Notes: generated by a model from the letters alone, not told the origin. A DNA stretch of 64,000 bases from Pecten maximus (GCF_902652985.1 NC_047015.1:44640001-44704000), one strand, 5' to 3'; shown: positions 14,793 through 60,124, numbered from the stretch's first letter. Numbers and translations: made by a program.

Positions 14793-14844
14793 ATCAAGGA
14801 ATTCAACTAGATGACCTTAGTTTGTAGGGATAGACGATCGGAAG

Positions 14845-15333: not shown

Positions 15334-15905
15334 CCTCAATGTTACCGGTACAGAACCGGGCTATCTAAGATGTCTATCACATAGCAGTACTTATAATTGC
15401 TTTCAAGTCGTTTCAAGACAAAGCAGTCCCTACAGAGGGCCACGGGATCGGTAAATTAATTAGTCGATAAAGAAATGTGTTTGCCGATATAATTATATGT
15501 TACTAATCATTTTAATACAGTTGTTCCTAAGGCAATGGCTTCATCTTTTTCTATTAGTAGCGGTGTGTATAAAACAAACTATCAACCTCAGTGGAATATA
15601 CACGGTACAAAATCGCCTTCGGTATATTTAGTTGAGTCCCGCTGCTCGCTGCAGATGTCTGATGGAATCGTGTGTATAAATTGATAAACGTTTGTGGTTT
15701 TCTTCTGTGTACAGATCACCAACGGACCTTGAGCAACACAACAAATCAATGAACCGTGGACAGACGAGGATATAATCTTCCTCCAGTACTTTTTGAACAT
15801 ATCAATATTTTATTGTGCATCTTACGTTTTAATACAAACGTATTAAGTATGGGGATATCGATTTCCTTGGTAACAGATGATAATCACAGGTGTGAATTAC
15901 GTTTG

Positions 15906-26179: not shown

Positions 26180-26302
26180 ATACACAATACAAAAAACAAA
26201 TTCGCTTTCTACGATAAAAAATTAATTGGTGTTACAAAGAAACATATAACTTATAATATATAAGCATACATGAATGAACTAAAATCAAAAGTAAAAGATT
26301 AC

Positions 26303-26732
26303 CGTGGTCGTTGTCATAGGAACAGTAGATGTGATGATATCACTGGTGTTGACGGGAAACGGAGTGGTTGTCATGGAAACATTCAACATTGCTAAGGCAT
26401 TAGTAGTGGAAGTAGACATACTGACATTTAGAATATCCGAGATGTTGGAAGCTGCAGTTGCCATGGTAACATTTACAATGTCCGAAATGTTGAGGGTGGT
26501 GGTTGCCATGACGGCCGTCACATTACTGCTCCGTGTACTAGAAATAGTAGTGGTCAACATTCTGGTTGCAATACTGGCCGTTGGCTGAACAGTGGTAGGG
26601 GTCAAGGTGACATTGACAGCACTGGCGGTCACAACAGCTTGACTTTCCATGTACTTGTTCATCTGGGAGATCTCCAGCAACCATATGGAAGGCAATGTTA
26701 TGATGAGATAGATAGCGAAACATGGACACAAC
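26303..26732 (-). CDS. TMEM26: TMEM26-family, middle coding exon (TM plus Ser/Thr-rich loop)
   Basis: Acceptor ttgcag at 26733, donor GTAATC at 26302; phase 2 then phase 0 joins restore KW-LCPCFAIYLIITLPSIWLLE, matching the TMEM26 P.lWlLE motif. Confidence 0.9.
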
Positions 26733-40811: not shown

Positions 40812-42204
40812 GCTAGTTTGTATTGTACTAGTACTTGTTTTGACTAGGCTGTGACCTAGTTTGTATTGTCCTAGCACTAGTTTTATTTAGGCTATGACCT
40901 AGTTTGTATTGGAATATTATTTGTTTTGACTAGGCTATGACCTAGTTTGTATTGTAATAGTACTAGTTTTGACTAGGCTGTGACCTAGTTTGTATTGTAA
41001 TAGTACTAGTTTTGACTAGGCTATGACCTTGTTTGTTTTGCAATAGTACTAGTTTTGACTAGGCTATGACCTTGTTTGTATTGTAATAGTACTAGTTTTG
41101 ACTAGGCTATGACCTAGTTTGTATTGTAATAGTACTAGTTTTGACTAGGCTATGACCTTGTTTGTATTGCAATAGTACTAGTTTTGACTAGGCTGTGACC
41201 TAGTTTGTATTGCAATAGTACTAGTTTTGACTAGGCTCTGACCTTGTTTGTATTGCAATAGTACTAGTTTTGACTAGGCTATGACCTTGTTTGTATTGCA
41301 ATAGTACTAGTTTTGACTAGGCTATGACCTAGTTTGTATTGTAATAGTACTAGTTTTGACTAGGCTATGACCTTGTTTGTATTGCAATAGTACTAGTTTT
41401 GACTAGGCTATGGCCTAGTTTGTATTGTAATAGTACTAGTTTTGACTAGGCTATGACCTAGTTTGTATTGTAATAGTACTAGTTTTGACTAGGCTGTGAC
41501 CTAGTTTGTATTGCAATAGTACTAGTTTTGACTAGGCTATGACCTTGTTTGTATTGCAATAGTACTAGTTTTGACTAGGCTGTGACCTAGTTTGTATTGT
41601 AATAGTACTAGTTTTGACTAGGCTTTGACCTTGTTTGTATTGCAATAGTACTAGTTTTGACTAGGCTGTGACCTAGTTTGTATTGTAATAGTACTAGTTT
41701 TGACTAGGCTATGACCTAGTTTGTATTGTAATAGTACTAGTTTTGACTAGGCTATGACCTAGTTTGTATTGTAATAGTACTAGTTTTGACTAGGCTATGA
41801 CCTAGTTTGTATTGTAATAGTACTAGTTTTGACTAGGCTATGACCTAGTTTGTATTGCAATAGTACTAGTTTTGACTAGGCTATGACCTAGTTTGTATTG
41901 CAATAGTACTAGTTTTGACTAGGCTATGACCTAGTTTGTATTGCAATAGTACTAGTTTTGACTAGGCTATGACCTAGTTTGTATTGCAATAGTACTAGTT
42001 TTGACTAGGCTATGACCTAGTTTGTATTGCAATAGTACTAGTTTTGACTAGGCTATGACCTAGTTTGTATTGTAATAGTACTAGTTTTGACTAGGCTGTG
42101 ACCTTGTTTGTATTGTAATAGTACTAGTTTTGACTAGGCTGTGACCTTGTTTGTATTGTAATAGTACTAGTTTTGACTAGGCTGTGACCTAGTTTGTATT
42201 GTAA
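40812..42204. repeat. 43-bp minisatellite (CTAGTTTGTATTGTAATAGTACTAGTTTTGACTAGGCTATGAC)
   Basis: Period 43; begins ~45 nt downstream of the cGLR-A stop codon. Confidence 0.97.
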
Positions 42205-42248: not shown

Positions 42249-44201
42249 TCAATCATCTGCCAACAAAAAAGATCTAATGTCTTGGACAAGTTTTTCTACC
42301 GCGCGTGTTCTGTTCTCCGTACCAGTCTCTTTATTCAGTAACACATCCGCCAACCCGGATAAAACATTTTCCTCCGTTGCTGTGCCTTGTTCTGCTGTGC
42401 TGGTTTTGTTTTCTTTCTCAATGCTTGCCCGTTCGTCTAATATAATTGACTTCGCTATCTGTAACACTAAATTTGGGAAATTTTGTCTTGCAGCTGATCG
42501 CTCGTTGTTTTCAGAATGAGATCGTCCGATACCTTCAAATACGTCAAGTGTTGCGTCCACGTAAGATCGCTTTTTCTCGTCCTCTATCTTCTTCTTCATT
42601 TCCATCATCTTATCCAGAGGCACGTCTATCACCTTCACTCCTTTTTCATTAACTTTGACAAGGAATACCTGAAGATTCCATACTGGTTTCATGTAGACCT
42701 CCTCTAATTTCTTGACGATTTCTACACAAACATCCCTCTCCAATCCCGCGAAGAGGTTGCTCGGGAAGAAGTAGTGAAGTAACCTACCCTCGTGTAGTCG
42801 ATCTCTCATGTAGTCCAGGAGGTTCCTCAGTACATCCAGTATGTCGTCACTTTTCTCTGAGTAGGTAGACGGGTCAGTGGATTCCAGCATCCAGTATAAA
42901 GCGGTTTTCCAGTGAAAGGTTGTCAGAACTTGTGAGTATTCCTCTAGTATGCTTCTCTGGAAAGCTTTGATCATCAACAAGCATTTCATGTGACCTGGAG
43001 GCATTTCTTTGGCCAGCATAATTTCCGCCAGATTGCATGAAAGGCAGAAATCAAGCTCAGGGTGTTCGTCTTTAATAGCCGGTTTCGCTACGACTAAAAA
43101 CTGACTTTTAGTGATGGCATCTACCGTTTGTCTCTTTGGCCAATATCGTGTTCGACGAATCCAGTCATTTATATATTTCGGTGGTCCAGATAAACGGAGG
43201 GCAGGAATGAAATCCTTCATTGACCTGGCAGTGTATGTCGCTCGAACAGGCTTAGCTGGTAGCTGTCGGACAGGTAAACAATTTGAATTTCCACGGATGA
43301 CATATTTTACCTCTGTAGTTTTTTCATATCGTTTATCCTGGTCTTCTGGGCTGTTGCCCCTGACATCAGCATCATCGGCATTAGATACATTGGTAAGAAG
43401 TTTGTCATCTTCCCTCTTTTTTCCCACAGATCCAAAATTTTGGTTACCAGCGAGGGCATCAAGCAAAGGCCCAAATGTCCGATGGAAAAAGCTGTCTGAG
43501 TTTACCAGGGTTTTGTGATATTGCAGTGATTTCGCGATAGTCTCCATTATGTGAACCACCCCGTTGCTGCTGTCTTGAAATACCTCAGACCGCTTAACCC
43601 GTTCAGTATACTTCTTTCGCAATCCACTGTCGGGTACAGACCTCGGATTGGTCTTTGGGATGAGGATATCACTTTGCCAGTCTATGAAGTCGGTCGTATT
43701 GGCACCAGGTTTGATGTCTGTGTCCATCGTTACTCGCGATACACCACCCTCTTTAAATGCCTGTGGCCTGTAAAATAAGTCAAATATTCCTTTCAAACGA
43801 CCGAAGAAGACCGGATTGAGCTTTTTCACCATTGTTGCTGGGAGAAACTCGCCATCAATCAAGTCTTTTCTATCTATTTGCTTTATGAATGAGCCATTTA
43901 TATGAACAAAACATGGCAAATCCTTCCTGTATTTCAGAGATTCCACAGGTACGGTGAGATCCCCCATCAACAGAAAGTCCCAGTCGCCTTGTTCCTGTTT
44001 GGTGCGGAGTCGTGTCCCTTCCTTCGTGCTTCCTACCACCATACAGTGTTCCTGTCCATAGTCTGACATTGCCATATTGATATACCGGCAATAATTTTCT
44101 AATCTCTGGTCTTGTTGTGTAGGTCGAGCCATCACTACCAATTCGTCCAGTATCTTTGGCAGTGTCATATCCTGTAAGTCTGGAGGGATTCCGTGATTCA
44201 T
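42249..44201 (-). CDS. cGAS-like receptor / Mab-21 nucleotidyltransferase, paralog A (650 aa)
   Basis: VVGS-TKEG...GDWDFL, third acidic residue in KDFIPAL, Mab-21 C-terminal motifs LSCNLAE, KCLLMIK, TFHWKTALYW, LHYFFPSNL; acceptor tttcag at 44207 makes ATG 44201 the likely start. Confidence 0.88.
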   Translation of the reverse strand: MNHGIPPDLQDMTLPKILDELVVMARPTQQDQRLENYCRYINMAMSDYGQEHCMVVGSTKEGTRLRTKQEQGDWDFLLMGDLTVPVESLKYRKDLPCFVHINGSFIKQIDRKDLIDGEFLPATMVKKLNPVFFGRLKGIFDLFYRPQAFKEGGVSRVTMDTDIKPGANTTDFIDWQSDILIPKTNPRSVPDSGLRKKYTERVKRSEVFQDSSNGVVHIMETIAKSLQYHKTLVNSDSFFHRTFGPLLDALAGNQNFGSVGKKREDDKLLTNVSNADDADVRGNSPEDQDKRYEKTTEVKYVIRGNSNCLPVRQLPAKPVRATYTARSMKDFIPALRLSGPPKYINDWIRRTRYWPKRQTVDAITKSQFLVVAKPAIKDEHPELDFCLSCNLAEIMLAKEMPPGHMKCLLMIKAFQRSILEEYSQVLTTFHWKTALYWMLESTDPSTYSEKSDDILDVLRNLLDYMRDRLHEGRLLHYFFPSNLFAGLERDVCVEIVKKLEEVYMKPVWNLQVFLVKVNEKGVKVIDVPLDKMMEMKKKIEDEKKRSYVDATLDVFEGIGRSHSENNERSAARQNFPNLVLQIAKSIILDERASIEKENKTSTAEQGTATEENVLSGLADVLLNKETGTENRTRAVEKLVQDIRSFLLADD

Positions 44202-44427
44202 GTCTACTGAAATAAAAATAGCACAGAAATATTTAGGCACATTTTACATATGTGATACATCAGTTGAAATAGAAAGGTCGTAAGTGGCAAAGTGTTTTAA
44301 AGTTTATGTAAGTTTAAATAAAATTTGATATGATATTATTTTCAATTGCAATGTCCACCTTAGATTCTTCTTGATTTTCGAAAGTGTAAAATATAGATTT
44401 AATAGCTACACCCCCCCCCCCCCCCTA

Positions 44428-44462
<35 letters not shown>

Positions 44463-45296
44463 CACACACACACCCATCCCCTCAACACCGCCCTTATCAT
44501 ACCCTACGTGGCGATATTGCCTGTTCTGTAAGAACATGAATGTGGAATTGAGCATGCGCATTTTGTGAATGTTTGTTAGTCATTGTTTATGTACTTATCA
44601 CTATTTAAAGTTTTAATTTGATATGTGTCCTATATATATTGTTATCTGTCTGTCATCACGCGATGATGTCCTTGTCACTTATAAAGACTATTTTACACGT
44701 GAGAATCACAGATTTACTTCATCATTGTGTATAGATAAGTTTATAAATCTGATAGACACTGGGATTCATGAAGTTCATAATTACTTCCTGGTTTATGTTA
44801 AAAATGTTTTGGTGACCTTCTTTTAATTTATTATTTCTTTTGATTTAAACATAATGTAAGGCTGAATTAAACAATCGCTTTTTGATTCACAAATTATAAC
44901 ATATTACTGACTACAATTTACTAATAATTAGCAATTACAGATACTTACATGTCGTTTTTTCCCCTAGGGTCCACCTAAAGTCTGCCTACAACTGCTCGCC
45001 CTGTTTCGTTCTTATATGTGTTGAAGTGTTTTTCCGTGTGGTATTTCCATCTCGACCTCGTGCTTACGTATCCGTGATACATAGAATGTGTAAGATAGAG
45101 AGGATGTTCATCGAGTGGTGGTTATGATTCATATTTCCCCATGTATAATTTCTTACGATTACTTTTGATTCTATCGGTCAATAAACGTGTGATCTAATAA
45201 ACGGACAAACGACAGAATATATTCTAAACATCACGAAATCATCCAAAAAGTCGACGAATTGAAGAGAATCGATATATAAAATAAAGTGAAAGCCAC

Positions 45297-45567
45297 GTCG
45301 ATGAGACGTGTTGCTATGTCTGATGGTTCCGTCGATGAAATTAGACGTGTTGTTATTTCTGATGGTTCCGTCGATGAAATTAGACGTGTTGCTATGTCTG
45401 ATGGTTCCGTCGATGAAATTAGACGTGTTGCTATGTCTGATGGTTCCGTCGATGAAATAAGACGTGTTGCTATGTCTGATGGTTCAGTCGATAGAATTAG
45501 ACGCGTTGCTATGTCTGATGGTTCAGTCGATAGAATTAGACGTGTTGCTATGTCTGTGGTTCCGTCG
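45297..45567. repeat. 39-bp tandem repeat, ~7 copies
   Basis: GTCGATGAAATTAGACGTGTTGCTATGTCTGATGGTTCC. Confidence 0.95.
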
Positions 45568-45622
45568 TTCTGGTCCTAAATGACCCTAGTTGTCGATGGG
45601 CCGTAAAACATAAACCACCAAA
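45568..45622 (+). mobile_element. 55-bp 5'-truncated SINE tail with 11-bp TSD
   Basis: TGGTTCCGTCG on both sides (45557-45567, 45623-45633); tail AAATGACCCTAGTTGTCGATGGGCCGTAAAAC. Confidence 0.7.
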
Positions 45623-45740
45623 TGGTTCCGTCGGTACCAAATTGGTTAACTTCTGAGTTTGATGATGTGACATTACCTAGATTTACATGACGGATGCCAT
45701 CAATAACACAGGACGCTCACCCTTCCGGAACTGTATAACG

Positions 45741-48700
45741 TGTCTCCATGTAAATCTGTACTTTATCAAGTGTCTCCATGTAAATCTGTACTTTATCAGG
45801 GGTCTCCATGTAAATATTTACTTTATCAGGGGTATCCATGTAAATCTTTACTTTATCAAGTGTTTCCATGTAAATCTGTACTTCATCAAGCGTCTCCATG
45901 TAAACATTTAATTTATGAAGTGTCTCCATGTAAACATTTACTTTATTAACTGTCTCCATGTAAATCTTTACTTTATCAAGTGTCTCCATGTAAACATTTA
46001 CTTTTCAACTGTCTCCATGTAAATCTTTACTTTATCAAGGGTATCCATGTAAACATTTACTTTTTCAACTGTCTCCATGTAAACATTTACTTTTTCAACT
46101 GTCTCCATGTAAACAGTTACTTTATCAACTGTCTCCATGTAAACATTTACTTTTTCAACTGTCTCCATGTAAATCTTTACTTTATCAACTGTCTCCATGT
46201 AAACAGTTACTTTATCAACTGTCTCCATGTAAACATTTACTTTATCAACTGTCTCCATGTAAATCTTTACTTTATCAACTGTCTCCATGTAAATCTTTAC
46301 TTTATCAACTGTCTCCATGTAAACATTTACTTTTTCAACTGTCTCCATGTAAATCTTTACTTTATCAAGGGTATCCATGTAAACATTTACTTTTTCAACT
46401 GTCTCCATGTAAACATTTACTTTATCAACTGTCTCCATGTAAACATTTACTTTATCAAGGATCTCCATGTAAACATTTACTTTATCAACTGTCTCCATGT
46501 AAACATTTACTTTATCAACTGTCTCCATGTAAACATTTACTTTATCAAGGGTCTCCATGTAAACATTTACTTTATCAAGGGTCTCCATGTAAACATTTAC
46601 TTTGTCAACTGTCTCCATGTAAATCTTTACTTTATCAACTGTCTCCATGTAAACATTTACTTTATCAACTGTCTCCATGTAAACATTTACTTTATCAACT
46701 GTCTCCTTGTAAATCTTTTCTTTATCAAGTGTCTCCATGTAAATCTGTACTTTATCAACTGTCTCCATGTAAACATTTACTTTATCAAGGGTCACCGTTG
46801 TAAACATTTACTTTATCAAGGGTCTCCATGTAAATCTTTACTTTATCAAGGGTATCCATGTAAACATTTACTTTATCAACTGTCTCAATGTAAATCTTTA
46901 CTTTATCAAGTGTCTCCATGTAAACATTTACTTTATCAAGTGTCTCCATGTTAACATTACTTATCAACTGTCTCCATGTAAACATTTACTTTATCAACTG
47001 TCTCAATGTAAATCTTTACTTTATCAAGTGTCTCCATGTAAACATTTACTTTATCAAGTGTCTCCATGTAAACATTACTTATCAACTGTCTCCATGTAAA
47101 CATTTACTTTATCAACTGTCTCCATGTAAACATTTACTTTATCAACTGTCTCCATGTAAACATTAACTTTATCAAGGGTCTACATGTAAACATTTACTTT
47201 ATCAACTGTCTCCATGTAAATATTTACTTTATCAACTGTCTCAATGTAAATCTTTACTTTATCAAGTGTCTCCATGTAAACATTTACTTTATCAAGTGTC
47301 TCCATGTAAACATTACTTATCAACTGTCTCCATGTAAACATTTACTTTATCAACTGTCTCCATGTAAACATTTACTTTATCAACTGTCTCCATGTAAACA
47401 TTAACTTTATCAAGGGTCTACATGTAAACATTTACTTTATCAACTGTCTCCATGTAAATATTTACTTTATCAAGGGTCTGCATTTAAAGCTTTACTTTAT
47501 CAAGGGTCTCCATGTAAACATTTACTTTATAAACTGTCTCCATGTAAATATTTACTTTGTCAAGGGTATCCATGTAAACATTTACTTTATCAACTGTCTC
47601 CATGTAAACATTTACTTTATCAACTGTCTCAATGTAAATCTTTACTTTATCAAGTGTCTCCATGTAAAAATTTACTTTATCAAGTGTCTCCATGTAATTT
47701 TTTACTTTATCAAGGGTCTCCATGTAAACATTTACTTTATCAAGTGTTTCCATGTAAACATTTACTTTATCAAGTGTCTCCATGTAAACATTACTTATCA
47801 ACTGTCTCCATGTAAACATTTACTTTATCAACTGTCTCCATGTAACATTTACTTTATCAACTGTCTCCATGTAAACATTTACTTTATCAAGGGTCTCCAT
47901 GTAAACATTTACTTTATCAACTGTCTCCATGTAAATATTTACTTTATCAAGGGTCTGCATTTAAAGCTTTACTTTATCAAGGGTATCCATGTAAACATTT
48001 ACTTTATCAAGGGTATCCATGTAAACATTTACTTTATCAACTCTCTCCATGTAAACATTTACTTTATCAACTGTCTCCATGTAAACATTTACTTTATAAA
48101 CTGTCTCCATGTAAATATTTACTTTATCAAGGGTATCCATGTAAACATTTACTTTATCAACTGTCTCCATGTAAATCTTTACTTTATCAACTGTCTCCAT
48201 GTAAATCTTTACTTTATCAACTGTCTCCATGTAAACATTTACTTTATCAAGGGTATCCATGTAAACATTTACCTTTTCAACTGTCTTCATGTAAACGTTT
48301 ACTTTATCAACTGTCTCCATGTAAATCTTTACTTTATCAAGTGTTTCCATGTAAACATTTACTTTATCAAGTGTCTCCATGTAAACATTACTTATCAACT
48401 GTCTCCATGTAAACATTTACTTTATCAACTGTCTCCATGTAACATTTACTTTATCAACTGTCTCCATGTAAACATTTACTTTATCAAGGGTCTCCATGTA
48501 AATATTTCCTTTATCAAGTGTCTCCATGTAAACATTTACTTTATCAACTGTCTCCATGTAAATATTTACTTTATCAACTCTCCATGTAAACATTTACTTT
48601 ATCAACTGTCTCCATGTAAATCTTTACTTTATCAACTGTTTCCATGTAAACAGTTACTTTATCAAGGATCTCCATGTAACATTTACTTGATCAAGGGTCT

Positions 48701-48885
48701 CCATGTAAACATTTTCTTTATCAAGGGTCTCCATGTAAATTTTTACTTTATCAAGAGTATCCATGTAAACATTTACTTTATCAAGTGTCGCCATGTAAAC
48801 ATTTACTTTATCAAGGGTATCCATGTAAACAGTTACTTTATCAACTGTCTCCATGTAAACATTTACTTTATCAACTATCTCAATG
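45741..48885. repeat. 30-bp minisatellite (GTCTCCATGTAAACATTTACTTTATCAACT), ~105 copies
   Basis: 10-aa periodic pseudo-ORFs on both strands. Confidence 0.97.
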
Positions 48886-50408
48886 TTTTTTGTTGTAGTT
48901 GGGGTTTTTTTCGTTGTCGATATCATTCTCTGTCAGATTTGTTTTTCGTCTGAAATATAAACTAACGTCAAGTTATATCATGATACATCTAAATCTAAAT
49001 AAAACCAAAGTATGAAGATAACATCCACTTGATAATCAACATGGTTTACATCTGGCCATGTATATAAACTTAAATCCACAAAGGACATTGCCTTCATTTT
49101 GTTATACCCGGGTAACAGATCTTGTCAGATTTGGTCACGTTAAAGTCAATGTTTTTTTTTATAATGAACTGATGTTTCTTTTTTTAGAAACACCGGGTCA
49201 ATATTCCGTTTATGGCGTCATAATCATCGTGACATTGTATCAAGATGATTATAAATCAATTCCACAATTTTGCCAAGTTTCATTACGAGGTTAATATGGT
49301 GTTATACCGAACTGGAAGAATCAGATATCAACTGAGGGCGAAGGTTCATAATAAATAATTATTAGATATAGTCCTATTTTCCTCAATTCTCATTGGCTAA
49401 GACATGGTCACGTAGAGGTAAGAGTTTTGAGATATTGACCTGATGTTTCCAATTTCAGAAACGCCGAGTCGATATTACATTTATGACATCATAATCATTG
49501 TGTCGTCACAATGACCCCATGTCATTTTCCTGTTGTCAAGATAAATATTATGCAATACCACCTCTGATTCGGTTATTATGGTGTTGTACCGACCTATAAA
49601 AGTGAGAGCCTTCATTTAAAATATCATAGATATGTTTATGTAATAAATAGAATCTTACACTCGCCAAATTCGTCAAAATGATCATGACACATCAAAATAT
49701 TGAACTCGTTTAATAAATTCTATATGACATAGCCATTTATGTAAGATCCCTATGTATAACTCCTAATGACACAGGTCATTGAGAAAGTGATTACTGCTCT
49801 TTGAGTAGTTATATAAAGTATGTGTACTTAATGTCCTATCAACTACACTGGGGATTTACAAATATATTAACATCGAGGTAAGTGTACGTTATGCCCATGT
49901 CAACTAATTTGATATTTAATAGCTAAATTCATTAAAAAAATAATTATACATGAACCATTTGGATATCATAACATTACGACAAACTCTTGTGTCCCTTTAA
50001 TTAAGTATCACGTACCTATTTAATACTTGTATATATCTAAGGCTATAACAGACAGGAATCCAATCTCTTTGTATAGCTATATAAAATTTGTTGAGTAAAG
50101 TACAGCATATAAATTACTATTTTGAGATAGAAAACGTTCCCGCTTAAGAGGGAAACCCCCTGTATTTCTAACCCGATGTATCAACGATACATTCTCTGTG
50201 CATTACTTTGATTCCGCCTAGGTTGGGCAGAGTTATTTACCCTTGACCGGAAGACTGTCTAGTCATTTCGAGGACGGAACGTTGACCAATTGTTTCGGTC
50301 ATTATTTCATTTACATAGTCAAAACGCCTCAGCAAAGCTCAACAGAAAACTGTTTATTATTATATAAAGCAATCTTACGTAATGTAAAATAAGTGAATAT
50401 TTTATCAT

Positions 50409-50473
50409 GCACCGGGGTACAACGGAGCGGTCACTCTAAGTAATGACCACGCTCGACGTTGCTTAACTTCGGT
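50409..50473 (-). pseudogene. 5S rRNA-derived fragment
   Basis: Minus strand reads ACCGAAGTTAAGCAACGTCGAGCGTGGTCATTACTT..GTGACCGC..TACCCCGGTGC, matching the internal control region of invertebrate 5S rRNA; truncated and diverged. Confidence 0.7.
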
Positions 50474-51427
50474 ACAAAGACACGACACTCAATCGCACAG
50501 TCACAAAAGCTAAAGGGACAATGCAGCTGAAATGCTCATAAATAAATCCAGTCATATTTCTTCATATCTGATAAATGTCTTGAGTATTGAAATTAGCAAA
50601 AAGACGTCGACGTTTCGATATAAAATATATTAGTTGTTTCTTGTGAGTTGTTCCTTATTTACACTAGTGGCCACAAGGAACACGACTGATGTCACGCCTC
50701 CTACAAATGCAATGGAATGTGCTAATGAAGATCAACCGAAGTTAGTCACTTTGTCATTGTGATTTGGACCCTTCGACATTCTTGTCTCTCGTCGGTTATG
50801 TATAATATAACCGAGATCACTGCGCCATCTGCCTGATGGGTGGAACAAGTAACCAACCAGGAAAATACGGGACATATTGAAATCTGTTAATGTGTTAATA
50901 GATTAATCCAGAATGTCCAACAAATGTTCCACTGTAATAACGATTTGTGGTGGTTCTTGTCCATTATCAGTTATATATTGTTACCTCAATGCCTGCGTCA
51001 CGTGACTGGCGGACGGAATACGAAGCAAATGTATAAATATCTTAACGTGTGAATAGATAGAGTCATGATGTAAAGCAAATGTTCATCTGTGGTGGATTAT
51101 GCTAGTATAAATAACTTTTTAGATATATTTCTTCATGGAAACATATTCACAAACCGCGACAGTATCCATGACCTATTGGCTGTGGATTTTGTAGTCAACA
51201 CCTTATAATCAAATTATGTTGGTCCTCTGTCTTTCTGTGTCTTTTTACACATCAATTGATTACTCAAATTAGAAGGTCAGTATATCATTAGATTATTCAA
51301 CCAAAGCCAATTGTATTCCTAAAACACAAACTATTAAACTATAATAGAGCAATAAGAAATTGTCTATGCAACGTATTGATAAATATAAAATCCCTTATCT
51401 ATAAAATGTAGTGAACAACTGAAATTT

Positions 51428-53506
51428 TCATTTCTTTCCCGCGAAGAAGAAGGCCAGTGCCTTTTTTTCTGCTTCCTTCTCTGCCTCTCTCCTTGTCTTT
51501 TTATCAGCTCCCAATTTAGAGACGAGATCTTTAACACTATCCATAAGGCTATCTTTGGATACGCTTGGTGTAACTGCTTTCCTTGGGTCTTTTGCCTCTT
51601 CTTCTTTCCTTCGGTTTTCCTCATCTGTAGCAGCAGTCTCCGCAATCTGGAAGAGAAGGTTTTGTACCGGTACTTTTGGCTGTTGAGCGGAATCAGGATA
51701 TGGTGGTTTTGCAAATCCTTCAAGGGCGTTCGCAAATGCATCTACCGTCAACTCATCCCTTTTGTGAACTACGTCGTTCTTTACTTTCGTTAGCGTTTCC
51801 GCCGGAATTTTCACCACGCGTCGATTATGGACGCGTTCCTTTTCAAGACAAAAAAAGGACCGTAAATAAAACTCTGGATCCAAGTGGATTTCATCTATTT
51901 TCTTGACGATTTCTACGCAAACATCCCTCTCCAATCCCGCGAAGAGGTTGCTCGGGAAGAAGTAGTGAAGCAACCTACCCTCGTGTAGTCGATCTCTCAT
52001 GTAGTCCAGGAGGTTCCTTAGTACGTCCAGTATGTCGTCACTTTTCTCTGAGTAGGTAGACGGGTCAGTGGATTCTAGCATCCAGTATAAAGCAGTTTTC
52101 CAGTGGAAGGTTGTCAGGACTTTTGAGTATTCCTCTAGTATGCTTCTCTGGAAAGCTTTGACCATCAACAAACATTTCATGTGACCTGGAGGCATTTCTT
52201 TCGTCAGCATGATTTCAGCCATATTACAAGACAGACTGAAATCTATCTCCGCCTTTTCATCTTTAACAGCAGGTTTAGCAACTACGAAAAATTGGCTTCT
52301 TGAAATAACTTCTACCACCTGGGAACGTGGCCAATGTTCTTGAAGGGCACGCTGCTTCCAATCTTCTATAAATTTCGGAGGTCCAGAAAGCCTTGCTGCT
52401 GGGATGAAGTCTTTCTCTGACTTGCTGCTATACGTCGCGTAAACTTCTTGGTGTTTTGCCTCTTCAGTCGTAGTCTCCATAAGTTCTTCTTTATTGATCT
52501 GTATACTACTAGTGTTGTCACCGGCTATTACCGATTCCCTATCTGTTTGTTTGGTAGAAACATCCATGTGTTCAGTGTCTGAATGACAAATGTTCTTAAT
52601 TTCTCCTTCGGCCATACTTTCTTTTTTGTCGATCGGTTGGATCTTTGCTTTCTTGCTCGTATCGGAATCGGGAAAATTGTTCACAGTCTCTTCTTGTTTG
52701 TCGCCTGAATATTCATCCGTTGGTCTTTTGTTTGACGTTCCACTCATTCTACCAGCCAGTGCGCTCAACATTGGGCCTAATTGCTGATATATCAAGCTAG
52801 ATGACGTGTCGTTAGATCTCCTATTTTGGACAAAGTCAACAACAGCTGCAAATGATGGCAAGATGTTGTTGGGATCTTCTGTCAGAGCTTTCGATCCTTT
52901 TCTACGCTCATCAAACTGTTGTCGTAAAGCGCGTTCACTCGCAGTTCTGACGTTTTGTTTTACGTTAAGATCTTTGCAATCCCAGTCGGCAAAGTTAGTC
53001 AAATTGTAGCCTAGTCTCATGTCGGTGCTGATTGCCAGATGTGGTGTATGTCGACCATGGGACGTGGAAGACCTACTCACGATGTCGAGTATACCTTTCA
53101 AGCGAGGAAATGCCAAAGTGCTGACATCCCTTAGCAACCAAGTTGGTAAGTATACGCCATCTATCAGCTGATCACAAAAATCCTGGCCCATGAAGGACCC
53201 TTTGATGTGAACAAAGCAAGGCAGGTCTTCTCTATACTCTAAACAGTCGACAGGGACTGTGAAATTACAGAGAAGAATATAATCGTAATCTCCTTCGTCC
53301 TGTTTTGAGCGTAGGCGTGTTCCCTCTTTGGTGCTCCCGACCACCATACAATATTCTTTGCCATACGCCGAAACGAAAGTGTTGATGTATCCACAGTACT
53401 GGTCTTGACGCTTATCGTTCGGTACCGGAAGTGTCATTGCCAGTAAATTGTCTAACAAACCCGCTAAAGGCATAGTCCCAATGTCATCTTCACCACCTTC
53501 CGCCAT
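51428..53506 (-). CDS. cGAS-like receptor / Mab-21 nucleotidyltransferase, paralog B (692 aa)
   Basis: VVGSTKEG...GDYDYI, KDFIPAA, HWP, same Mab-21 C-terminal motifs; acceptor ttttcag at 53513. Confidence 0.9.
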   Translation of the reverse strand: MAEGGEDDIGTMPLAGLLDNLLAMTLPVPNDKRQDQYCGYINTFVSAYGKEYCMVVGSTKEGTRLRSKQDEGDYDYILLCNFTVPVDCLEYREDLPCFVHIKGSFMGQDFCDQLIDGVYLPTWLLRDVSTLAFPRLKGILDIVSRSSTSHGRHTPHLAISTDMRLGYNLTNFADWDCKDLNVKQNVRTASERALRQQFDERRKGSKALTEDPNNILPSFAAVVDFVQNRRSNDTSSSLIYQQLGPMLSALAGRMSGTSNKRPTDEYSGDKQEETVNNFPDSDTSKKAKIQPIDKKESMAEGEIKNICHSDTEHMDVSTKQTDRESVIAGDNTSSIQINKEELMETTTEEAKHQEVYATYSSKSEKDFIPAARLSGPPKFIEDWKQRALQEHWPRSQVVEVISRSQFFVVAKPAVKDEKAEIDFSLSCNMAEIMLTKEMPPGHMKCLLMVKAFQRSILEEYSKVLTTFHWKTALYWMLESTDPSTYSEKSDDILDVLRNLLDYMRDRLHEGRLLHYFFPSNLFAGLERDVCVEIVKKIDEIHLDPEFYLRSFFCLEKERVHNRRVVKIPAETLTKVKNDVVHKRDELTVDAFANALEGFAKPPYPDSAQQPKVPVQNLLFQIAETAATDEENRRKEEEAKDPRKAVTPSVSKDSLMDSVKDLVSKLGADKKTRREAEKEAEKKALAFFFAGKK

Positions 53507-53749
53507 GATTACCTGAAAAATTAAAGTATCTATATACTCGCATAATCCGTAAGGTATTGTAAAATTCGTCCCTTAATGCCGATGGATATTTGTTTTTTTT
53601 CTCTCTCAAGCTTATAATGAAGATTCCGTTAAGAAACAACATTGATAAAGTGTCTTCCCTTGTCTATATAAAACTTGTGTGTTTAAGTTGAGACAACAAC
53701 GAAGAAGCCACTAAAAAGTACGCAATATATGGTAATTGTGTAATAGTCT

Positions 53750-53761
53750 ACTTTCAGTTTC
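53750..53761 (-). promoter_or_regulatory. ISRE/IRF-E consensus GAAACTGAAAGT in the 5' intron of cGLR-B
   Basis: Exact GAAANNGAAA match 240 nt upstream of the coding exon; motif match only. Confidence 0.4.
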
Positions 53762-55311
53762 ATTTGTTATCTGGATGAAATGATCCTGAGAGAAGACATA
53801 GGAATTAGAAGAATATCATTAAGACATTATATCACGCCCCTCATTCGAAAACATCAACTCCACCATTCTGCATGCACGTCCTTTGCACACAACACATCCG
53901 ACGTCATTCTGAGTACAAAACAAGACCGCCCCTTCACAGTTAGGGTTTTTCGTTCTACACACACCTCATGACAACCACTCAATCGCACATCACGTCCGCT
54001 GTGTTACAAGTCCGCCGCCATCCTCAACCTCAATCGCACAAAAAGCCAGCCCCTTTACATGTACAACTCAACGTCACTACACCAACCCTCCGCCCCACAC
54101 GAACACACGTCCGCCGCCCCTACACACACAAGCGTACTGCCCCCTACACAAACGCAAGTCGGCCTCATTTTACACACACGACTACACTACAGATCATTTA
54201 TTCTAGCTAGACTATCAACGAAATGCATGTCATTGTTAATTGGAGATATATCCTAATATTCAGGTAACTTTTCATTATTTGTTTAATTTTGAAAATGTCA
54301 GTGTAACATTATGATCAACGACGTATTGATAAAAATATTCGTGTATTTGGTCACGATGGACGTGTGTATAGTTCAGCGGAATGATTGTCGATATATACAA
54401 CACATGGTAACGCAATATGGTCAATCAAAGTTCAAGGGAAATGAGTAGACAGTTACTTACCAATAAGTCGAGCTTACTACGGGACTGTCTACATCTGAAC
54501 ACCAAAATGGCACCGTCTGATCCTTGCCGTTACTAATTACCGATCGAGTGGGATTTCCAATAGGTCTATAAATAGCGGTGACGAAGTTTTGGATTCGAAA
54601 CTTGATGGAATAACCCAGTTCAAAGTATCGATTTGACTTTTCGTTAATAGTTCAAGTCAAACATGGCCTTTTGATATATATGTTTCACGTAGGAAAGTTT
54701 ATTAGATATTCCAAATATTTTAGACTACCACAGCTAATATTCTTGTGGTAGCACTGATCTACATGTTTACTAGACCAGAACATTATATACGTGTACATAC
54801 CATAGACAAACATTGATTTACATTCAGCAGAAATTAGTCACTGGAAACTTCCGCAAATGGTTATTAGCTTTCGTTTTACCCTACGACAGTGTAGGGATGA
54901 CTATAGAGCCGTCTTAGGGATTTTCTGTCGGGTAACTGTTGTATAAAGTACACGAATAGATTAAAGAGTTCAACATCTGGTCCAAAATGACAAATGGAGT
55001 TATTGTTTGCCCTCTATACGTCATTTGTTCGTTTTTACAGAGGGACCAATGTGAGAGAAATATTACCTTCAGATCGAGGAAGATTGATATCATAAAAGCT
55101 ATGATGTGTAAGAAATGTTGTTATCGGAAATTTTACTGTATGACAAGTCAGATTCAGAGTCGAAGATTGCCGGGATTCGGACCGCTCTACTAGAGTTCAT
55201 GTTCTGTCCCCAAAACAACGCCCTAGAGTACACGTTCTACCATCCCAAACATTAAATCATAAAGTACAAGTTATGTAACCTCCAATTTACGACCTATATC
55301 ATATCTTAGAA

Positions 55312-56720
55312 TGTAGGTAATGCTATCCCAATATTACATCCTAGATTACAGGTAATGTTTTCCCAATATTACATCCTAGATTAGAGGTAATGTTACCCCA
55401 ATATTACATCCTAGAGTACAGGTAATGCTACCCCAATATCACATCCCAGATTACAGGTAATGTTACCCCAATATCACATCCCATATTACAGGTAATGTTA
55501 TCCCAATATTACATCCTTGATTACAGGTAATGCTACCCCAATATCATATCCTAGATTACAGGTAATGTTTCCCCAATATTACATCCTAGAGTACAGGTAA
55601 TGTTACCCCAATATTACATCCTAGATTACAGGTAATGTTTCCCCAATAGTACATCCCAGATTACAGGTAATGTTACCCCAATATTACATCCTAGATTACA
55701 GGTAATGTTTCCCCAATATTACATCCTTGAATACAGGTAATGTTACCCCAACATCACATCCCAGATTACAGGTAATGTTACCCCAATATCACATCCTAGA
55801 TTACAGGTAATGTTTCCCCAATATTACATCCTTGAATACAGGTAATGTTACCCGAATATTACATCCTAGATTACAGGTAATGTTACCCCAATATTACATC
55901 CTAGATTACAGGTAATGTTACATCAATATTACATCCTAGATTACAGGTAAAGTTACCCCAATATCACATCATAGATTACAGGTAATGCTACCCGAATATC
56001 ACATCCCAGATTACAGGTAATGCTATCCCAATATTACATCCCAGATTACAGGTAATGTTACCCCAATATCACATCCTAGATTACAGGTAATGTTTCCCCA
56101 ATATTACATCCTTGAATACAGGTAATGTTACCTCAATATATACATCCTAGATTACAGGTAATGTTACCCCAATATTACATCCTAGATTACAGGTAATGTT
56201 ACCTCAATATTATATCCTAGATTACAGGTAATGTTACCCCAATATTACATCCTAGATTACAGGTAATGTTACTTCAATATTACATCCCAGATTACAGGTA
56301 ATGTTACCCCAATATTACATCCTAGATTACAGGTAATGTTACCCCAATATTACATCCATTATTACAGGTAATGTTACCCCAATATTACATCCAGGTTAAC
56401 AGGTAGTGATACTCTAATATTACATCCCAGATTACAGGTAAATGTACCCAAATATTACATCCGAGATTACAGGTAATGTTACCTCAATATTACATCCCAG
56501 ATTACAGGTAATGTTACTCCAATATCATATCCTAGATTACAGGTAATGTTACCCTTATATCACATCCTAGATTACAGGTAATGTTACCCTAATAGTACAT
56601 TCTAGATTACAGGTAATGTTACCTCAATATTACATCCTAGATTACAGGTAATGTTACCCTAATAGTACATTCTAGATAACAGACAATGTTACCCCCATAT
56701 TACATTCGAGATTGCAGGTT
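55312..56720. repeat. 35-bp minisatellite (GATTACAGGTAATGTTACCCCAATATTACATCCTA)
   Basis: Period 35. Confidence 0.96.
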
Positions 56721-57372
56721 TTGTTCCCGAAAATGAAATCATATAGTATATCATGATTTATTGCCAAACACGACATCCTATAGTGCAAAATTTGTTCCTT
56801 TAAATACTACACGAGGGTCATTTTATTTATCAATGGAGCTCCATGCTCAAGAGTGCATATTCTGTTCCACACAATCGGTTGTAATGTTTGTACTAGGATA
56901 GCTGACATACTAGAACAAAGTCCAATGTGCTATTGTCTCTGGTACACCTGTGTATCAGTACACGAACCTGACATAAACAAAACTGACGAAATAATAACAC
57001 AAGCTGGCTATTTGATATCAAATTATAAGTAACGATACACAAATTGTTACTCCTGTCATTCATGGCTTGGTTACCGAGACCATAATTATTGCGAAGGTGT
57101 TGTAAGAAAACAAAAGTAAAACTTGTGGTCATAATAACATGCATAACACCACATGAATAAATGAACAATTCGACGAATTTAACATAAGCGTGCTTATCAA
57201 ATGGGGCTCAGGCAAAGTCTACACAGGTCGTTGTAGATTCGCGATGACAAACTGAAAATGCTGCGAAATGTGTAATACATAGTAGTTTTTGACTACAAGT
57301 GAATTCATTAAACATTTTTTACAATTTCTTAATATAATTTATTATAGACAATATAACATTATTTCCTTGACG

Positions 57373-59229
57373 CTATATAATTTCTTTGAGTAGACCAGAT
57401 AGTTCGAACACGGTAAATAACGCAAACATCGTGTCCTGTGTTTTAGATTCAGGTGAAGTGAGATAAGTGTCAAACGTCTTCATGATCCTGTCTACAGGCA
57501 CCATCAGTGGTCTCCCCTTCTCCACCAAATCTTTAGTCAAATCAGTACAGATCGCCGAAGCCACCTTCACCACAGCCTTTTGGAACAACGGCGTATTGTC
57601 GGATGACTGGGGTGGTTCTCTAACAAATTGTTCCAAAGAAGAAACGATGTTGTCAACGACAAATTCATCAATGTCAATGCGTAGAGATTTTTGCAGTTTT
57701 TCAACGTAAGATCGAGGCACTTCAACAGTCCTTACACTACTGTTAATATCTTCATGCCTGAAAAACTCCCGTAATGCATCTACGGGATCGTCCAGAATTT
57801 CTGTGAGCTTATCTTCAATCGCACTGGTAGTTAATGCATCCAAATGACCAATGATATTGCTGGTATTGAAGTAATGTTGTAGACTAGATTTACGAAGACT
57901 TTTAAGCATGTAATTCATTACATCCTTCACCAAACTGAGCACATTCTCAACCCTATCTTTTGCTATCTGCGAGTGGTCAGCGACCTCTGACACCCAGTAT
58001 AATGCTGTTTTCCAATGGAAGGTAGTGAGGTGATCACAATACTCATCTAAATGACTGCTCTGGTACGCTTTGATCATGAGAAGGCATTTTCTTTGAACAG
58101 GATACATGCAAGCAGATAGTTGTATCTCTGCTGAGATGTAGGACAGACAAAAGTCAATATTTTTCTCTGACGCGCTATTTGCCAATGGATTACAAATCAC
58201 GTAAAACTCACTGTTGCATATACTGTTCACTACGTCGCCCCCTGGCCACGCCTTGTCACACACGCGTGATTTCCACGTATCCAGATGTTTGGGTGGACCG
58301 TCCAATGGAAATGTAGCAATGAACTTTTTTTGCGATTTCCATCGGTAGCTTGCATAAAATGCCTCATCACTATCAGTACTTTCTGGCGACCCTAATTCTT
58401 CCTCCGAGTCTGTCGTGTCTGGTTTGGCTGTTCTGGTTGGCATTGTAGCTTGGCTGTTTATCTCGTCTATAACTGCATTAACCAAGGGGCCCAAATACTG
58501 AAAATATTGCGTACTAGTTCCGTGATTGTCACTCAGAGTTTTCGTCAAAATTGTCAGCTTCCTCAAAACTTCAATAACTTTGTCGTTGATGAACATCAAA
58601 AATGGCGAATTTCTTATCCTCTGTCGGAAAAGCCTGTACACTTTATCAGCGTCAGTATCCGTTGACTTCGGTCTTATTGGAATCTCGTCACAAACCCAGT
58701 CTGTGTAGTTTGTAAGAGTAACGCCTGGCTTGTTTGGCGTAGAAATGTCGATATGAGGAGCGTGCTGACCTTGGAAAGCGCTAACCAGCAAAACAAAGGA
58801 AAACAGTCCACGTAGTCCTGTGAATGCTTCACTTCTGACTGTTTCGAGGAGGTTACTAGGGAGATATTTTCCGTCAACTAGCTCAACTGGAAGTTCATCG
58901 TGTAATTCCCTGCCGTCGATGTGAACAACACATGGGTCTATGTCATTGTAGTGCAGATACTTTGAACTTATTTGTATTTCGGAAATCATCAAATAATCAA
59001 AGTCTCCCTGATCCTGGTTTGACCGTAGTCTCGTCCGCTCGGTGGCACTGCCTACTACCATGCATCGCTCGTCCCCGTACAATGATAGAAGACTGTTGAT
59101 ATAACGGCAGTAACGATCTTGTTGGAGGTCTGAGGGAACAGGTGTAGCTTTTTTCAACAATTCTTTTGTCAACTGCTCAAAGGTCTGTGCACTGTAAATG
59201 TCGCGTTCATCATCGTCGATGTCGCTCAT
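57373..59229 (-). CDS. cGAS-like receptor / Mab-21 protein, paralog C (618 aa), third catalytic Asp replaced by Lys
   Basis: VVGSATER...GDFDYL, KKFIATF at the KDFIPA position, WP, LSYISAE, TFHWKTALYW, LQHYF..SNI; acceptor tttcag at 59242. Confidence 0.88.
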   Translation of the reverse strand: MSDIDDDERDIYSAQTFEQLTKELLKKATPVPSDLQQDRYCRYINSLLSLYGDERCMVVGSATERTRLRSNQDQGDFDYLMISEIQISSKYLHYNDIDPCVVHIDGRELHDELPVELVDGKYLPSNLLETVRSEAFTGLRGLFSFVLLVSAFQGQHAPHIDISTPNKPGVTLTNYTDWVCDEIPIRPKSTDTDADKVYRLFRQRIRNSPFLMFINDKVIEVLRKLTILTKTLSDNHGTSTQYFQYLGPLVNAVIDEINSQATMPTRTAKPDTTDSEEELGSPESTDSDEAFYASYRWKSQKKFIATFPLDGPPKHLDTWKSRVCDKAWPGGDVVNSICNSEFYVICNPLANSASEKNIDFCLSYISAEIQLSACMYPVQRKCLLMIKAYQSSHLDEYCDHLTTFHWKTALYWVSEVADHSQIAKDRVENVLSLVKDVMNYMLKSLRKSSLQHYFNTSNIIGHLDALTTSAIEDKLTEILDDPVDALREFFRHEDINSSVRTVEVPRSYVEKLQKSLRIDIDEFVVDNIVSSLEQFVREPPQSSDNTPLFQKAVVKVASAICTDLTKDLVEKGRPLMVPVDRIMKTFDTYLTSPESKTQDTMFALFTVFELSGLLKEII

Positions 59230-60124
59230 GGTTTAGGTCTTCTGAAACGGGAGATAAACCAAAGCGTCTATAAAAACCCAGCAGGCATTAGCAAGCAAAT
59301 TATCTGACATGCAGTAGATGTTTAGACTCAAAGTTAAAAATAGCTCGGCTCCACATGTTAGAAGCAGCAGATATACCATAAGATATAACACATAACGATG
59401 TTTAATGTTTACACAATCTTTTCGTATTTTCTTATATTCGGTCGGCATATCGAATCAATGTGGTATACAACAATTCAAACTTACCTATTATCTCCGAGGA
59501 TTTGGCAGCATTATTAGGCGTAGCCTGTTCTCCTAAACTCCTGTCAAACTGCACTATCGACCTTCTGTCGGTACCCGAAACATCGCGAGCTGTACACTAC
59601 GACTGTTTTGTAAGCATTTGTTTTAAACCTGTTTTTGTGTAGTTTAACAGAGGCATCAGACCAATACAGTTGTGTGAATGGGCTTAGCACTGGGCTTTGT
59701 AAGACACGGCGGTATATGTGTAACTTAAACATGTACGTATACATGTTCCTTTAGATATAATCGTCTGGTAAGTCATGGTGTATTTACCCTGGAGGTCATT
59801 GTGTATAGACTCTTGACCAAACGCAGTAATTAATTCTTCAATACAATAGTTGTTTATAGCAGGATGTATCTGTGGAATTCCTATTGTCATGTTATATTGT
59901 CAGACACAATGATAAAATGGACTCGAAACAAAATGAAGTCAAAACATTAAGCAGACTGCCGTAATTCCAAATATTTCTATCACACTTTGGACATTAGCTT
60001 AACATGTATCACCACTAATTAAACAGTGTTATGTGATTTGTTTTCGGTATGACGCCAAAACAAGTTACTGGATTGATACATCTACATAGAATGACAGGCC
60101 GTTACATATCACATCTGTCTGTTA

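What the first reader, a model, noticed from the sequence alone, without database searches (positions are those of the whole stretch)
42249..59229. Tandem array of three divergent cGAS-like receptors (cGLR/Mab-21) with atypical architecture
Seen: three co-oriented single-coding-exon ORFs (650/692/618 aa), each with GS...DxD and the Mab-21 C-terminal motifs. All have ~270 aa between DxD and the third-Asp strand (including a helical block and a variable acidic/low-complexity segment), a family-specific TFHWKTALYW signature, and a ~110-140 aa helical C-terminal extension. I see no TPR/ankyrin domain or cGAS zinc ribbon. Known: animal cGLRs are pattern-recognition enzymes that make cyclic dinucleotides for STING and are expanded in bivalves. 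Inference: an uncharacterised innate-immune sensor cluster whose copies may differ in ligand or product.
Basis: partly seen in the sequence, partly recalled or inferred. Interest (0 to 1): 0.85.

Follow-up and report, generated by a model that had tools for sequence, protein, structure and literature searches.

The report
Three scallop cGAS-like receptor genes
Three neighbouring genes in a scallop genome encode cGAS-like immune-sensor proteins from a bivalve clade that is already catalogued; one copy has anciently lost a catalytic residue, and the other two repeatedly overwrite part of each other's sequence.

Summary
Three co-oriented minus-strand ORFs of 650, 692 and 618 aa (c1 42249-44201, c2 51428-53506, c3 57373-59229) encode paralogues with a full cGAS/cGLR fold: VIA Z 26.6, with 325 of 355 mouse cGAS residues aligned. 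Each also has a ~175-aa insert in the N-lobe and a ~130-aa helical C-terminal extension with no recognisable relative.

The cluster is not uncharted. The genome is a scallop, probably Pecten maximus. All three genes have one-to-one orthologues in other scallops. The Mizuhopecten orthologue of c1 (XP_021346622.1) was sample 13 of the 140 cGLRs purified in the published cGLR screen, and it was not among the 15 active enzymes taken forward.

The whole c3 orthogroup carries K or R in place of the third catalytic Asp, yet is the most conserved lineage. A 303-bp tract (96% identical) has been converted between c1 and c2, and the same segment evolves in concert in other scallops. The proteins are acidic to neutral (pI 5.0-6.9), unlike nucleic-acid-sensing cGLRs.

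First-reader notes on this same window had already flagged the Asp loss and the tract; both were re-tested here. Expression could not be checked. Verdict: new members of a known kind, moderate interest.

The parts
42249..44201 (-). c1: cGLR paralogue, 650 aa, single uninterrupted coding exon; G57/S58, D73/D75 and D330 intact
   Evidence: ORF. Mab-21_C 44.5 bits. AF2 model pLDDT 80.8, pTM 0.81. cGAS match Z 26.6. Motif positions.
51428..53506 (-). c2: cGLR paralogue, 692 aa; G57/S58, D73/D75 and D366 intact; has the longest acidic linker
   Evidence: 67% identical to orthologues in Ylistrum, Argopecten and Mizuhopecten.
57373..59229 (-). c3: cGLR-fold paralogue, 618 aa; GS and DxD kept, but Lys302 replaces the third catalytic Asp; likely non-catalytic
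   Evidence: All four members of the orthogroup carry K or R at this position.
58324..58326 (-). c3 codon 302 (Lys), at the position of the third catalytic Asp
   Evidence: Alignments A1 and A3; coordinates.
43212..43214 (-). c1 codon 330, the third catalytic Asp (the c2 equivalent is 52409-52411)
   Evidence: Conserved in at least 90% of 36 family members. Aligns to the Asp of MB21D2 in 'YDIVP'.
43977..44033 (-). c1 GS...DxD active-site segment (c2: 53282-53338; c3: 58996-59052)
   Evidence: G, S and both Asp are invariant in 36 sequences; coordinates.
43260..43631 (-). c1 N-lobe insert: helical block (aa 191-251) plus a disordered linker of variable length (aa 254-314)
   Evidence: DSSP and pLDDT of the model. 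The linker columns vary strongly in length across the family. Only 325 residues of model range 13-512 align to cGAS.
42252..42656 (-). c1 C-terminal helical extension (aa 516-650), outside the cGAS fold
   Evidence: cGAS alignments end at model residue 511-516. Folded alone it gives five helices at pLDDT 67.9. Best PDB match Z 6.4, which is background.
42708..43010 (-). Gene-conversion tract in c1 (aa 398-498, Mab-21_C helices including TFHWKTALYW)
   Evidence: 292 of 303 nt identical to c2, against 46-63% in the flanking 300 columns. pS 0.153 inside, ~0.79 outside.
51899..52201 (-). Gene-conversion tract in c2 (aa 436-536)
44207..44220 (-). Splice-acceptor-like pyrimidine tract plus CAG, 5 nt upstream of the c1 ATG
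   Evidence: Read directly from the sequence. Inference only; no RNA data.
53513..53526 (-). Splice-acceptor-like pyrimidine tract plus CAG, 6 nt upstream of the c2 ATG
   Evidence: Read directly from the sequence. Inference only.
59242..59258 (-). Splice-acceptor-like pyrimidine tract plus CAG, 12 nt upstream of the c3 ATG
   Evidence: Read directly from the sequence. Inference only.

Best explanation
This is an old, syntenically conserved tandem array of three cGAS-like receptor (cGLR) genes in a scallop, from a clade restricted to pteriomorph bivalves. Shown: all three proteins have the two-lobed cGAS/cGLR cage. Each also carries a clade-specific helical-plus-disordered insert in the N-lobe and a helical C-terminal extension. 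c1 and c2 keep the full GS / DxD / Asp catalytic set. Inferred: c1 and c2 are ligand-gated nucleotidyltransferases that make a nucleotide second messenger for a STING-type receptor. Because they are acidic to neutral, and an orthologue was not picked up as active with poly I:C and dsDNA, their activating ligand is probably not long double-stranded nucleic acid. c3 lost the third metal-binding Asp before scallops diversified and has been conserved since. It most likely acts without catalysis, as a regulator, decoy or adaptor. c1 and c2 repeatedly homogenise about 100 codons of the C-lobe by gene conversion.
For: Fold: Foldseek top hits are MB21D2, cGAS, Sp-cGLR1 and Cv-cGLR1, all at probability 1.00. 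VIA gives Z 26.6, rmsd 3.5 A, 325/355 residues of mouse cGAS; Cv-cGLR1 gives Z 25.0. Profile against PDB: Sp-cGLR1 7e-16, MB21D2 1.4e-12, cGAS 3e-8. Catalytic residues: G, S, D and D invariant and the third Asp at >=90% in 36 sequences. Conservation: one-to-one orthologues at 57-76% identity in Mizuhopecten, Ylistrum, Argopecten and Logan assemblies, with all three Mizuhopecten genes on one 393,706-bp contig. Paralogue pS ~0.79 (saturated) against pN 0.41-0.51. Only these three genes of the subfamily exist in the genome. Catalogue: XP_021346622.1 was cloned as a cGLR, and the paper counts 61 cGLRs and 3 STINGs for Pecten maximus. STING_LBD exons are present in this genome above cut-off. c3: K/R in all four orthologues, each exactly 618 aa and 72-76% identical. 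pI 6.89 / 5.59 / 5.02, family median 5.9, against >8.5 for nucleic-acid-sensing cGLRs (PMC9980059). Conversion.
Against: No enzymatic activity is known for any member. The one orthologue that was screened was not among the 15 active enzymes, although the screen used only nucleic-acid ligands and the figure showing per-sample results is not held. The motif deviates from the published cGLR pattern: V rather than Q/T before GS, and 223-290 aa rather than 50-90 before the third acidic residue. The NTase half is below Pfam's threshold. Conservation of GS/DxD in c3 despite loss of the third Asp leaves residual or altered chemistry possible.
Confidence: 0.6

Rival explanations
1. All three proteins, not only c3, act without making a nucleotide signal. 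They would serve as protein scaffolds or kinase enhancers, as reported for shrimp Mab21 proteins that bind and activate IKK-epsilon, or as Mab21L1-type developmental factors.
For: Shrimp LvMab21-1/2/3 neither bind dsDNA or dsRNA nor make cGAMP, but they activate IKK-epsilon directly (PMC12928593). The c1 orthologue was not selected as active in the 140-enzyme screen. The pI is acidic. The large insert and the C-terminal extension could be protein-interaction modules. c3 shows that the fold is retained without a full active site.
Against: GS and both DxD aspartates are invariant, and the third Asp is kept in at least 90% of 36 family members over mussel-oyster-scallop distances. That is hard to explain without selection for catalysis. 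The screen's authors state that many cGLRs appear inactive only because their ligand is unknown.
Confidence: 0.25
2. c1 and c2 are conventional dsRNA or dsDNA sensors like Cv-cGLR1 or Drosophila cGLR1, and they differ only in product.
For: They have the same fold as Cv-cGLR1 (Z 25.0). Nucleic-acid sensing is the commonest known cGLR mode (PMC9980059). The C-lobe segment of c1 (aa 315-520) is basic, with pI 8.8.
Against: Whole-protein pI is 5.6-6.9, against >8.5 for known nucleic-acid sensors. The orthologue incubated with poly I:C plus ISD45 was not among the active enzymes chosen. There is no zinc ribbon.
Confidence: 0.12
3. The ORFs are decaying retrocopies or unexpressed relics with no function.
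For: The coding regions are intronless and lie in a repeat-rich stretch with satellites and transposon remnants. No expression data were obtained.
Against: The frames are intact at 618-692 codons. Orthologues in at least four scallop genera are collinear end to end. Paralogue pN is far below the saturated pS. All c3 orthologues are exactly 618 aa. Acceptor-like sites just upstream of each ATG suggest a normal spliced 5' UTR rather than retroposition.
Confidence: 0.03

Closest known systems
Animal cGAS-like receptors (cGLRs) as catalogued by Li et al. 2023 (PMC9980059), specifically screen sample 13, Mizuhopecten yessoensis XP_021346622.1
   Same: XP_021346622.1 is the direct orthologue of c1 (57-58% identity, collinear over the full length). 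It has the same insert, the same C-terminal extension and the same catalytic residues.
   Different: The window adds the Pecten copies and the two other paralogues. The motif spacing (223-290 aa) and V-G-S lie outside the paper's written pattern of X50-90 and [QT]GS. No ligand or product is known.
Human MB21D2 (PDB 7lt1), an orphan cGLR
   Same: It is the best single-sequence PDB hit (E 4.3e-7) and the top Foldseek hit (E 6.5e-10). It has a complete predicted active site, no known ligand, and no zinc ribbon.
   Different: Sequence similarity is confined to the segment from the third-Asp strand onward, and identity in the structural alignment is 12%. MB21D2 lacks the ~175-aa N-lobe insert. Orthology was not tested.
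Mouse and human cGAS
   Same: The whole catalytic domain superposes (Z 26.6, 325/355 residues). The GS, DxD and third-Asp layout is the same.
   Different: There is no zinc ribbon (a 9-residue loop), no basic N-terminal tail, and an acidic pI. 14-18% identity. Extra insert and extra C-terminal extension.
Oyster Cv-cGLR1 (PDB 8gjw) and coral Sp-cGLR1 (PDB 8gjy)
   Same: Invertebrate cGLRs of the same fold: Cv-cGLR1 Z 25.0, and Sp-cGLR1 is the best profile hit at 7e-16.
   Different: Those two enzymes are activated by dsDNA and dsRNA respectively (PMC9980059), and that paper reports pI above 8.5 for nucleic-acid-sensing cGLRs. The scallop proteins are acidic and belong to a separate clade.
Catalytically incomplete Mab-21 proteins (Mab21L1/2; shrimp LvMab21-1/2/3)
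   Same: This comparison applies to c3: the cGLR fold is retained without a complete active site. Shrimp Mab21 proteins give a precedent for signalling through protein contacts.
   Different: c3 keeps GS and DxD and lacks only the third Asp. It sits in tandem with two intact paralogues. No partner is known.

Membership tests
cGLR (criteria of Li et al. 2023, PMC9980059) | Active-site motif h[QT]GS - X8-20 - [DE]h[DE]h - X50-90 - h[DE]h | tested here: inconclusive
   GS, X14 and DhDh are met in all three. The residue before GS is V, not Q/T. The spacing to the third acidic residue is 254/290/223 aa, not 50-90. The third acidic residue is present in c1 and c2 (K-D-F) but absent in c3 (K-K-F). 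The authors nevertheless included the c1 orthologue, so the written pattern was not applied strictly.
cGLR (criteria of Li et al. 2023) | [quoted passage not shown] | tested here: met
   VIA aligns 325 of 355 cGAS residues over model residues 13-512. By sequence only the C-terminal half is detectable.
cGLR (criteria of Li et al. 2023) | AlphaFold-predicted structural homology to known cGLR/CD-NTase enzymes | tested here: met
   The c1 model has pLDDT 80.8 and pTM 0.81. It matches MB21D2, cGAS, Sp-cGLR1 and Cv-cGLR1 at probability 1.00. Only c1 was modelled; c2 and c3 are inferred from the alignment.
cGLR (functional definition) | Ligand-activated synthesis of a nucleotide second messenger | not testable with these tools
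   The orthologue was screened with poly I:C and ISD45 and was not among the 15 active enzymes. The per-sample TLC figure is not held.
Pfam Mab-21_C (PF20266) | Score above the gathering threshold (24.1 bits) | tested here: met
   44.5, 43.1 and 29.5 bits.
Pfam Mab-21 NTase domain (PF03281) | Score above the gathering threshold (24.1 bits) | tested here: not met
   19, 18 and 13.1 bits, covering only profile positions ~96-194. Some mussel relatives do carry PF03281 in the precomputed annotation.
cGAS proper (orthologue of vertebrate cGAS) | Zinc-ribbon thumb H(X5)CC(X6)C between the NTase core and the C-lobe | tested here: not met
   Only 9 residues (e.g. AKEMPPGHM) lie between the AEIxL and KCLLM segments, with no Cys/His cluster.
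cGAS proper | Basic, nucleic-acid-binding surface (pI > 8.5 in nucleic-acid-sensing cGLRs) | tested here: not met
   pI 6.89, 5.59 and 5.02. This is a whole-protein value; surface electrostatics were not computed.

The most novel reading that the evidence does not exclude
c3 is a conserved pseudo-cGLR that works with its catalytically intact neighbours c1 and c2, as a regulator, decoy or adaptor. The clade as a whole senses a cationic, non-nucleic-acid ligand through its clade-specific insert and C-terminal extension. Recurrent conversion of the C-lobe between c1 and c2 would then keep a shared interaction surface identical.
Probability: 0.15. Interest if true: 0.65.

Novelty: new member of a known kind. 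Interest (0 to 1): 0.4.

Why it matters
Bivalves have the largest known cGLR repertoires, and most of those receptors are orphans. This array is a compact and tractable case. It has two intact paralogues and one naturally Asp-less paralogue that has been conserved across scallops, all acidic, all carrying the same unusual insert, and with an orthologue that has already been made recombinantly. It could help identify non-nucleic-acid cGLR ligands and show what a catalytically incomplete cGLR does. It does not reveal a new kind of system.

Tried and rejected
2. C-terminal extension: folded alone it gave a mediocre model (pLDDT 67.9). A search against 48,161 PDB representatives gave only generic helical matches (best Z 6.4), below the tool's stated background for helical bundles. 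No relative was identified; this is not evidence of a new fold.
3. Literature: a search for the Mizuhopecten locus and accession numbers found nothing in main texts. A search for scallop + cGAS + STING found no functional study of these genes.
4. Further copies or fragments: none in the window or elsewhere in the genome at E <= 1e-5. Only distant Mab-21 ORFs at 23-26% identity turned up.
5. Paralogue dN/dS: synonymous sites are saturated outside the conversion tract, so only pN << pS can be stated.
6. Complex prediction for c3 with c1 or c2 was considered but not run. I do not claim binding, and the full pair exceeds the size limit.
7. A phylogeny with the published screen panel was not built, because those sequences are available only as text in a supplement and not by reference.
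Full report
**Observation.** Three ORFs lie on the minus strand at 42249-44201 (c1, 650 aa from the first ATG; the frame opens at a GTG at 44240), 51428-53506 (c2, 692 aa) and 57373-59229 (c3, 618 aa). They are the three longest ORFs in any frame of the 64-kb window. c1 and c2 are 44% identical, and c3 is about 32% identical to c2. Each has G-S, then 14 residues, then D-x-D near the N-terminus. The distance from the second Asp to the position of the third catalytic acidic residue is 254, 290 and 223 residues. All three carry TFHWKTALYW. This is the clade's version of the general Mab-21 motif, because it aligns to SYHVKTAIFH in cGAS and PYHLRSMMLW in MB21D2.

**Organism and conservation.** The assembly has 918,306,378 bases in 3,983 contigs, and the window is C1:44,640,001-44,704,000. 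From memory that size matches the Pecten maximus assembly. The closest proteins are from the scallops Ylistrum balloti, Argopecten irradians and Mizuhopecten yessoensis.
- c2 has orthologues at 67% identity, c1 at 57-61%, and c3 at 72-76%.
- In Mizuhopecten the three orthologues (LOC110446016, LOC110446015 and LOC110446012) are reported on a contig of the same length, 393,706 bp. In Ylistrum all three are on a 4,039,350-bp contig.
- The array therefore predates the divergence of these scallop genera.
- A six-frame search of the whole genome finds only these three genes of the subfamily. Other Mab-21 ORFs of 712-796 aa on other chromosomes are 23-26% identical.
- A profile search found named relatives only in pteriomorph bivalves: Pectinidae, Mytilus, Saccostrea, Crassostrea and Pinctada. 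The protein atlas places c1 in a cluster of 107 members, mostly Mollusca.

**Fold.** By sequence only the C-terminal half is recognisable. Mab-21_C scores 44.5, 43.1 and 29.5 bits against a cut-off of 24.1. The NTase-domain model scores 13-19 bits, below its cut-off. An AlphaFold2 model of c1 built on 36 family sequences is confident (pLDDT 80.8, pTM 0.81), except for residues 254-314.
- Foldseek ranks human MB21D2, cGAS, coral Sp-cGLR1 and oyster Cv-cGLR1 first, all at probability 1.00.
- VIA-align gives Z 26.6 and rmsd 3.5 A, with 325 of 355 residues of mouse cGAS aligned to model residues 13-512. Cv-cGLR1 gives Z 25.0.
- Both lobes of the cGLR cage are therefore present.
- About 175 residues within 13-512 have no counterpart in cGAS. 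From the secondary-structure string these are mainly four helices at 191-251 and the disordered linker at 254-314, which varies greatly in length across the family.
- Residues from about 516 to 650 lie beyond the cGAS fold. Folded alone they form five helices at modest confidence (pLDDT 67.9) and match nothing above background (best Z 6.4).
- There is no room for a zinc ribbon: 9 residues stand where cGAS has its thumb.
- Pfam finds no TPR or ankyrin repeats.

**Catalytic residues.** In the 36-sequence alignment G57, S58, D73 and D75 (c1 numbering) are invariant, and D330 is kept in at least 90%. The exceptions are c3 and its orthologues. Pecten has Lys, while the Mizuhopecten, Ylistrum and Logan-derived orthologues have Arg. 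GS and DxD remain in all four. These four proteins are all exactly 618 aa and 72-76% identical, with a nearly invariant C-terminal tail. The loss is therefore ancient, and the protein has stayed under constraint. That points to a non-catalytic or altered role rather than decay.

**Selection and concerted evolution.** Between paralogues, synonymous sites are saturated (pS about 0.79) while pN is 0.41-0.51. Together with the intact orthologues, this shows long-term constraint. One segment is an exception.
- A 303-bp tract (c1 42708-43010, c2 51899-52201; c1 aa 398-498) is identical at 292 of 303 positions. The flanking 300 columns are 63% and 46% identical. Inside the tract pS is 0.153 and pN is 0.020.
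- In protein trees the tract groups paralogues by species: Pecten c1+c2 has support 94/89 and Ylistrum c1+c2 has 83/91. Mizuhopecten c1 and c2 are 87.6% identical in the tract, against 79-80% to their orthologues.
- The rest of the protein groups by orthology, with the c1 clade at 100/100 and the c2 clade at 99/99.
- Gene conversion of this C-lobe segment between c1 and c2 is therefore recurrent in scallops. c3 does not take part.

**Gene structure.** Each ORF is collinear end to end with its orthologous RefSeq protein models, so the coding region needs no splicing. A pyrimidine tract followed by CAG lies 5, 6 and 12 nt upstream of the three start codons. This suggests a non-coding first exon and a 5'-UTR intron, and it argues against recent retroposition. 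It is inference only.

**What is already known.** Li et al. (PMC9980059) define cGLRs by three criteria: the motif h[QT]GS-X8-20-[DE]h[DE]h-X50-90-h[DE]h, homology across both lobes, and AlphaFold similarity. They list 3,020 enzymes and note extreme expansions in bivalves.
- Their Table S5 counts 61 cGLRs and 3 STINGs for Pecten maximus, and 73 and 5 for Mizuhopecten yessoensis.
- Their Table S3 lists the 140 proteins purified for the screen. Sample 13 is XP_021346622.1, the Mizuhopecten orthologue of c1. Its Note field is empty, whereas the 15 active enzymes are labelled there.
- The screen used poly I:C and ISD45 dsDNA. The authors state that many cGLRs appeared inactive, probably because their ligands are unknown.
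- They also state that nucleic-acid-sensing cGLRs have pI above 8.5, while some acidic cGLRs may respond to positively charged non-nucleic-acid ligands.
- The scallop proteins have pI 6.89, 5.59 and 5.02, and the family median is 5.9 over 72 sequences.
- STING ligand-binding-domain exons are present in this genome above the Pfam cut-off.

**Mechanism.** Most likely, c1 and c2 are ligand-gated nucleotidyltransferases of the cGLR type that signal to STING. Their ligand is probably not long double-stranded nucleic acid. c3 is probably a non-catalytic paralogue. The fold and the residue conservation are shown. Catalysis, ligand, product, and any interplay among the three proteins are inferred. The main rival is that the whole clade signals through protein contacts without a nucleotide product, as reported for shrimp Mab21 proteins that activate IKK-epsilon (PMC12928593). 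The invariance of the catalytic residues outside the c3 lineage argues against that reading for c1 and c2.

**Verdict.** The claim of an uncharted cluster is not supported, because the clade is in the published catalogue and one orthologue has been purified and screened. These are new members of a known kind, of moderate interest.

Noticed in passing
window 40813-42204, 45304-45567, 45741-48886, 55315-56719: Large minisatellite arrays fill the spaces around the three genes: a 43-bp unit x32 starting 45 bp after the c1 stop codon, a 39-bp unit x7, a 30-bp unit x105 (3.1 kb), and a 35-bp unit x40. The 30-bp array produces spurious ORFs of 324 and 269 aa.
   Followed up: partly
window 22717-23916 and 26285-26731, minus strand: Two exons of a TMEM26-like gene (PF09772; 152 bits for profile positions 131-285, and 21 bits for positions 63-123), followed by a long low-complexity tail. 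It is the nearest recognisable cellular gene to the cGLR array.
   Followed up: partly
window 37450-39069, minus strand: A 539-aa ORF with hydrophobic segments, many N-x-S/T sites and Cys residues, and no Pfam match. A first-reader note calls it an envelope gene of an LTR element. This was not tested here.
   Followed up: no
window 20411-20887, plus strand: A weak match, below threshold, to a mariner-type transposase fragment (PF01359, E 0.0011, 19.2 bits).
   Followed up: no
window 57376-57450 (c3 C-terminus): The last ~24 residues of c3 are almost invariant in all four scallop orthologues and are rich in hydrophobic residues. They are far more conserved than the tails of c1 and c2. This could be an interaction or membrane-associating helix.
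   Followed up: no
window 14001-16000: A local GC-rich stretch (GC 0.496, GC skew +0.24) in a window that otherwise averages about 0.37 GC.
   Followed up: no
G000:C2:40306554-40307018 and C2:40329466-40329930; also C17, C9, C18: Other uninterrupted Mab-21 ORFs of 712-796 aa, 23-26% identical to c2 in the C-lobe. Two nearly equal hits lie 23 kb apart on C2, which suggests another tandem cGLR pair.
   Followed up: no
G000:C14:38631478-38631702 and C2:41494545-41494781: STING ligand-binding-domain exons above the Pfam cut-off (32.1 and 30 bits). The second has one in-frame TGA within the match.
   Followed up: no
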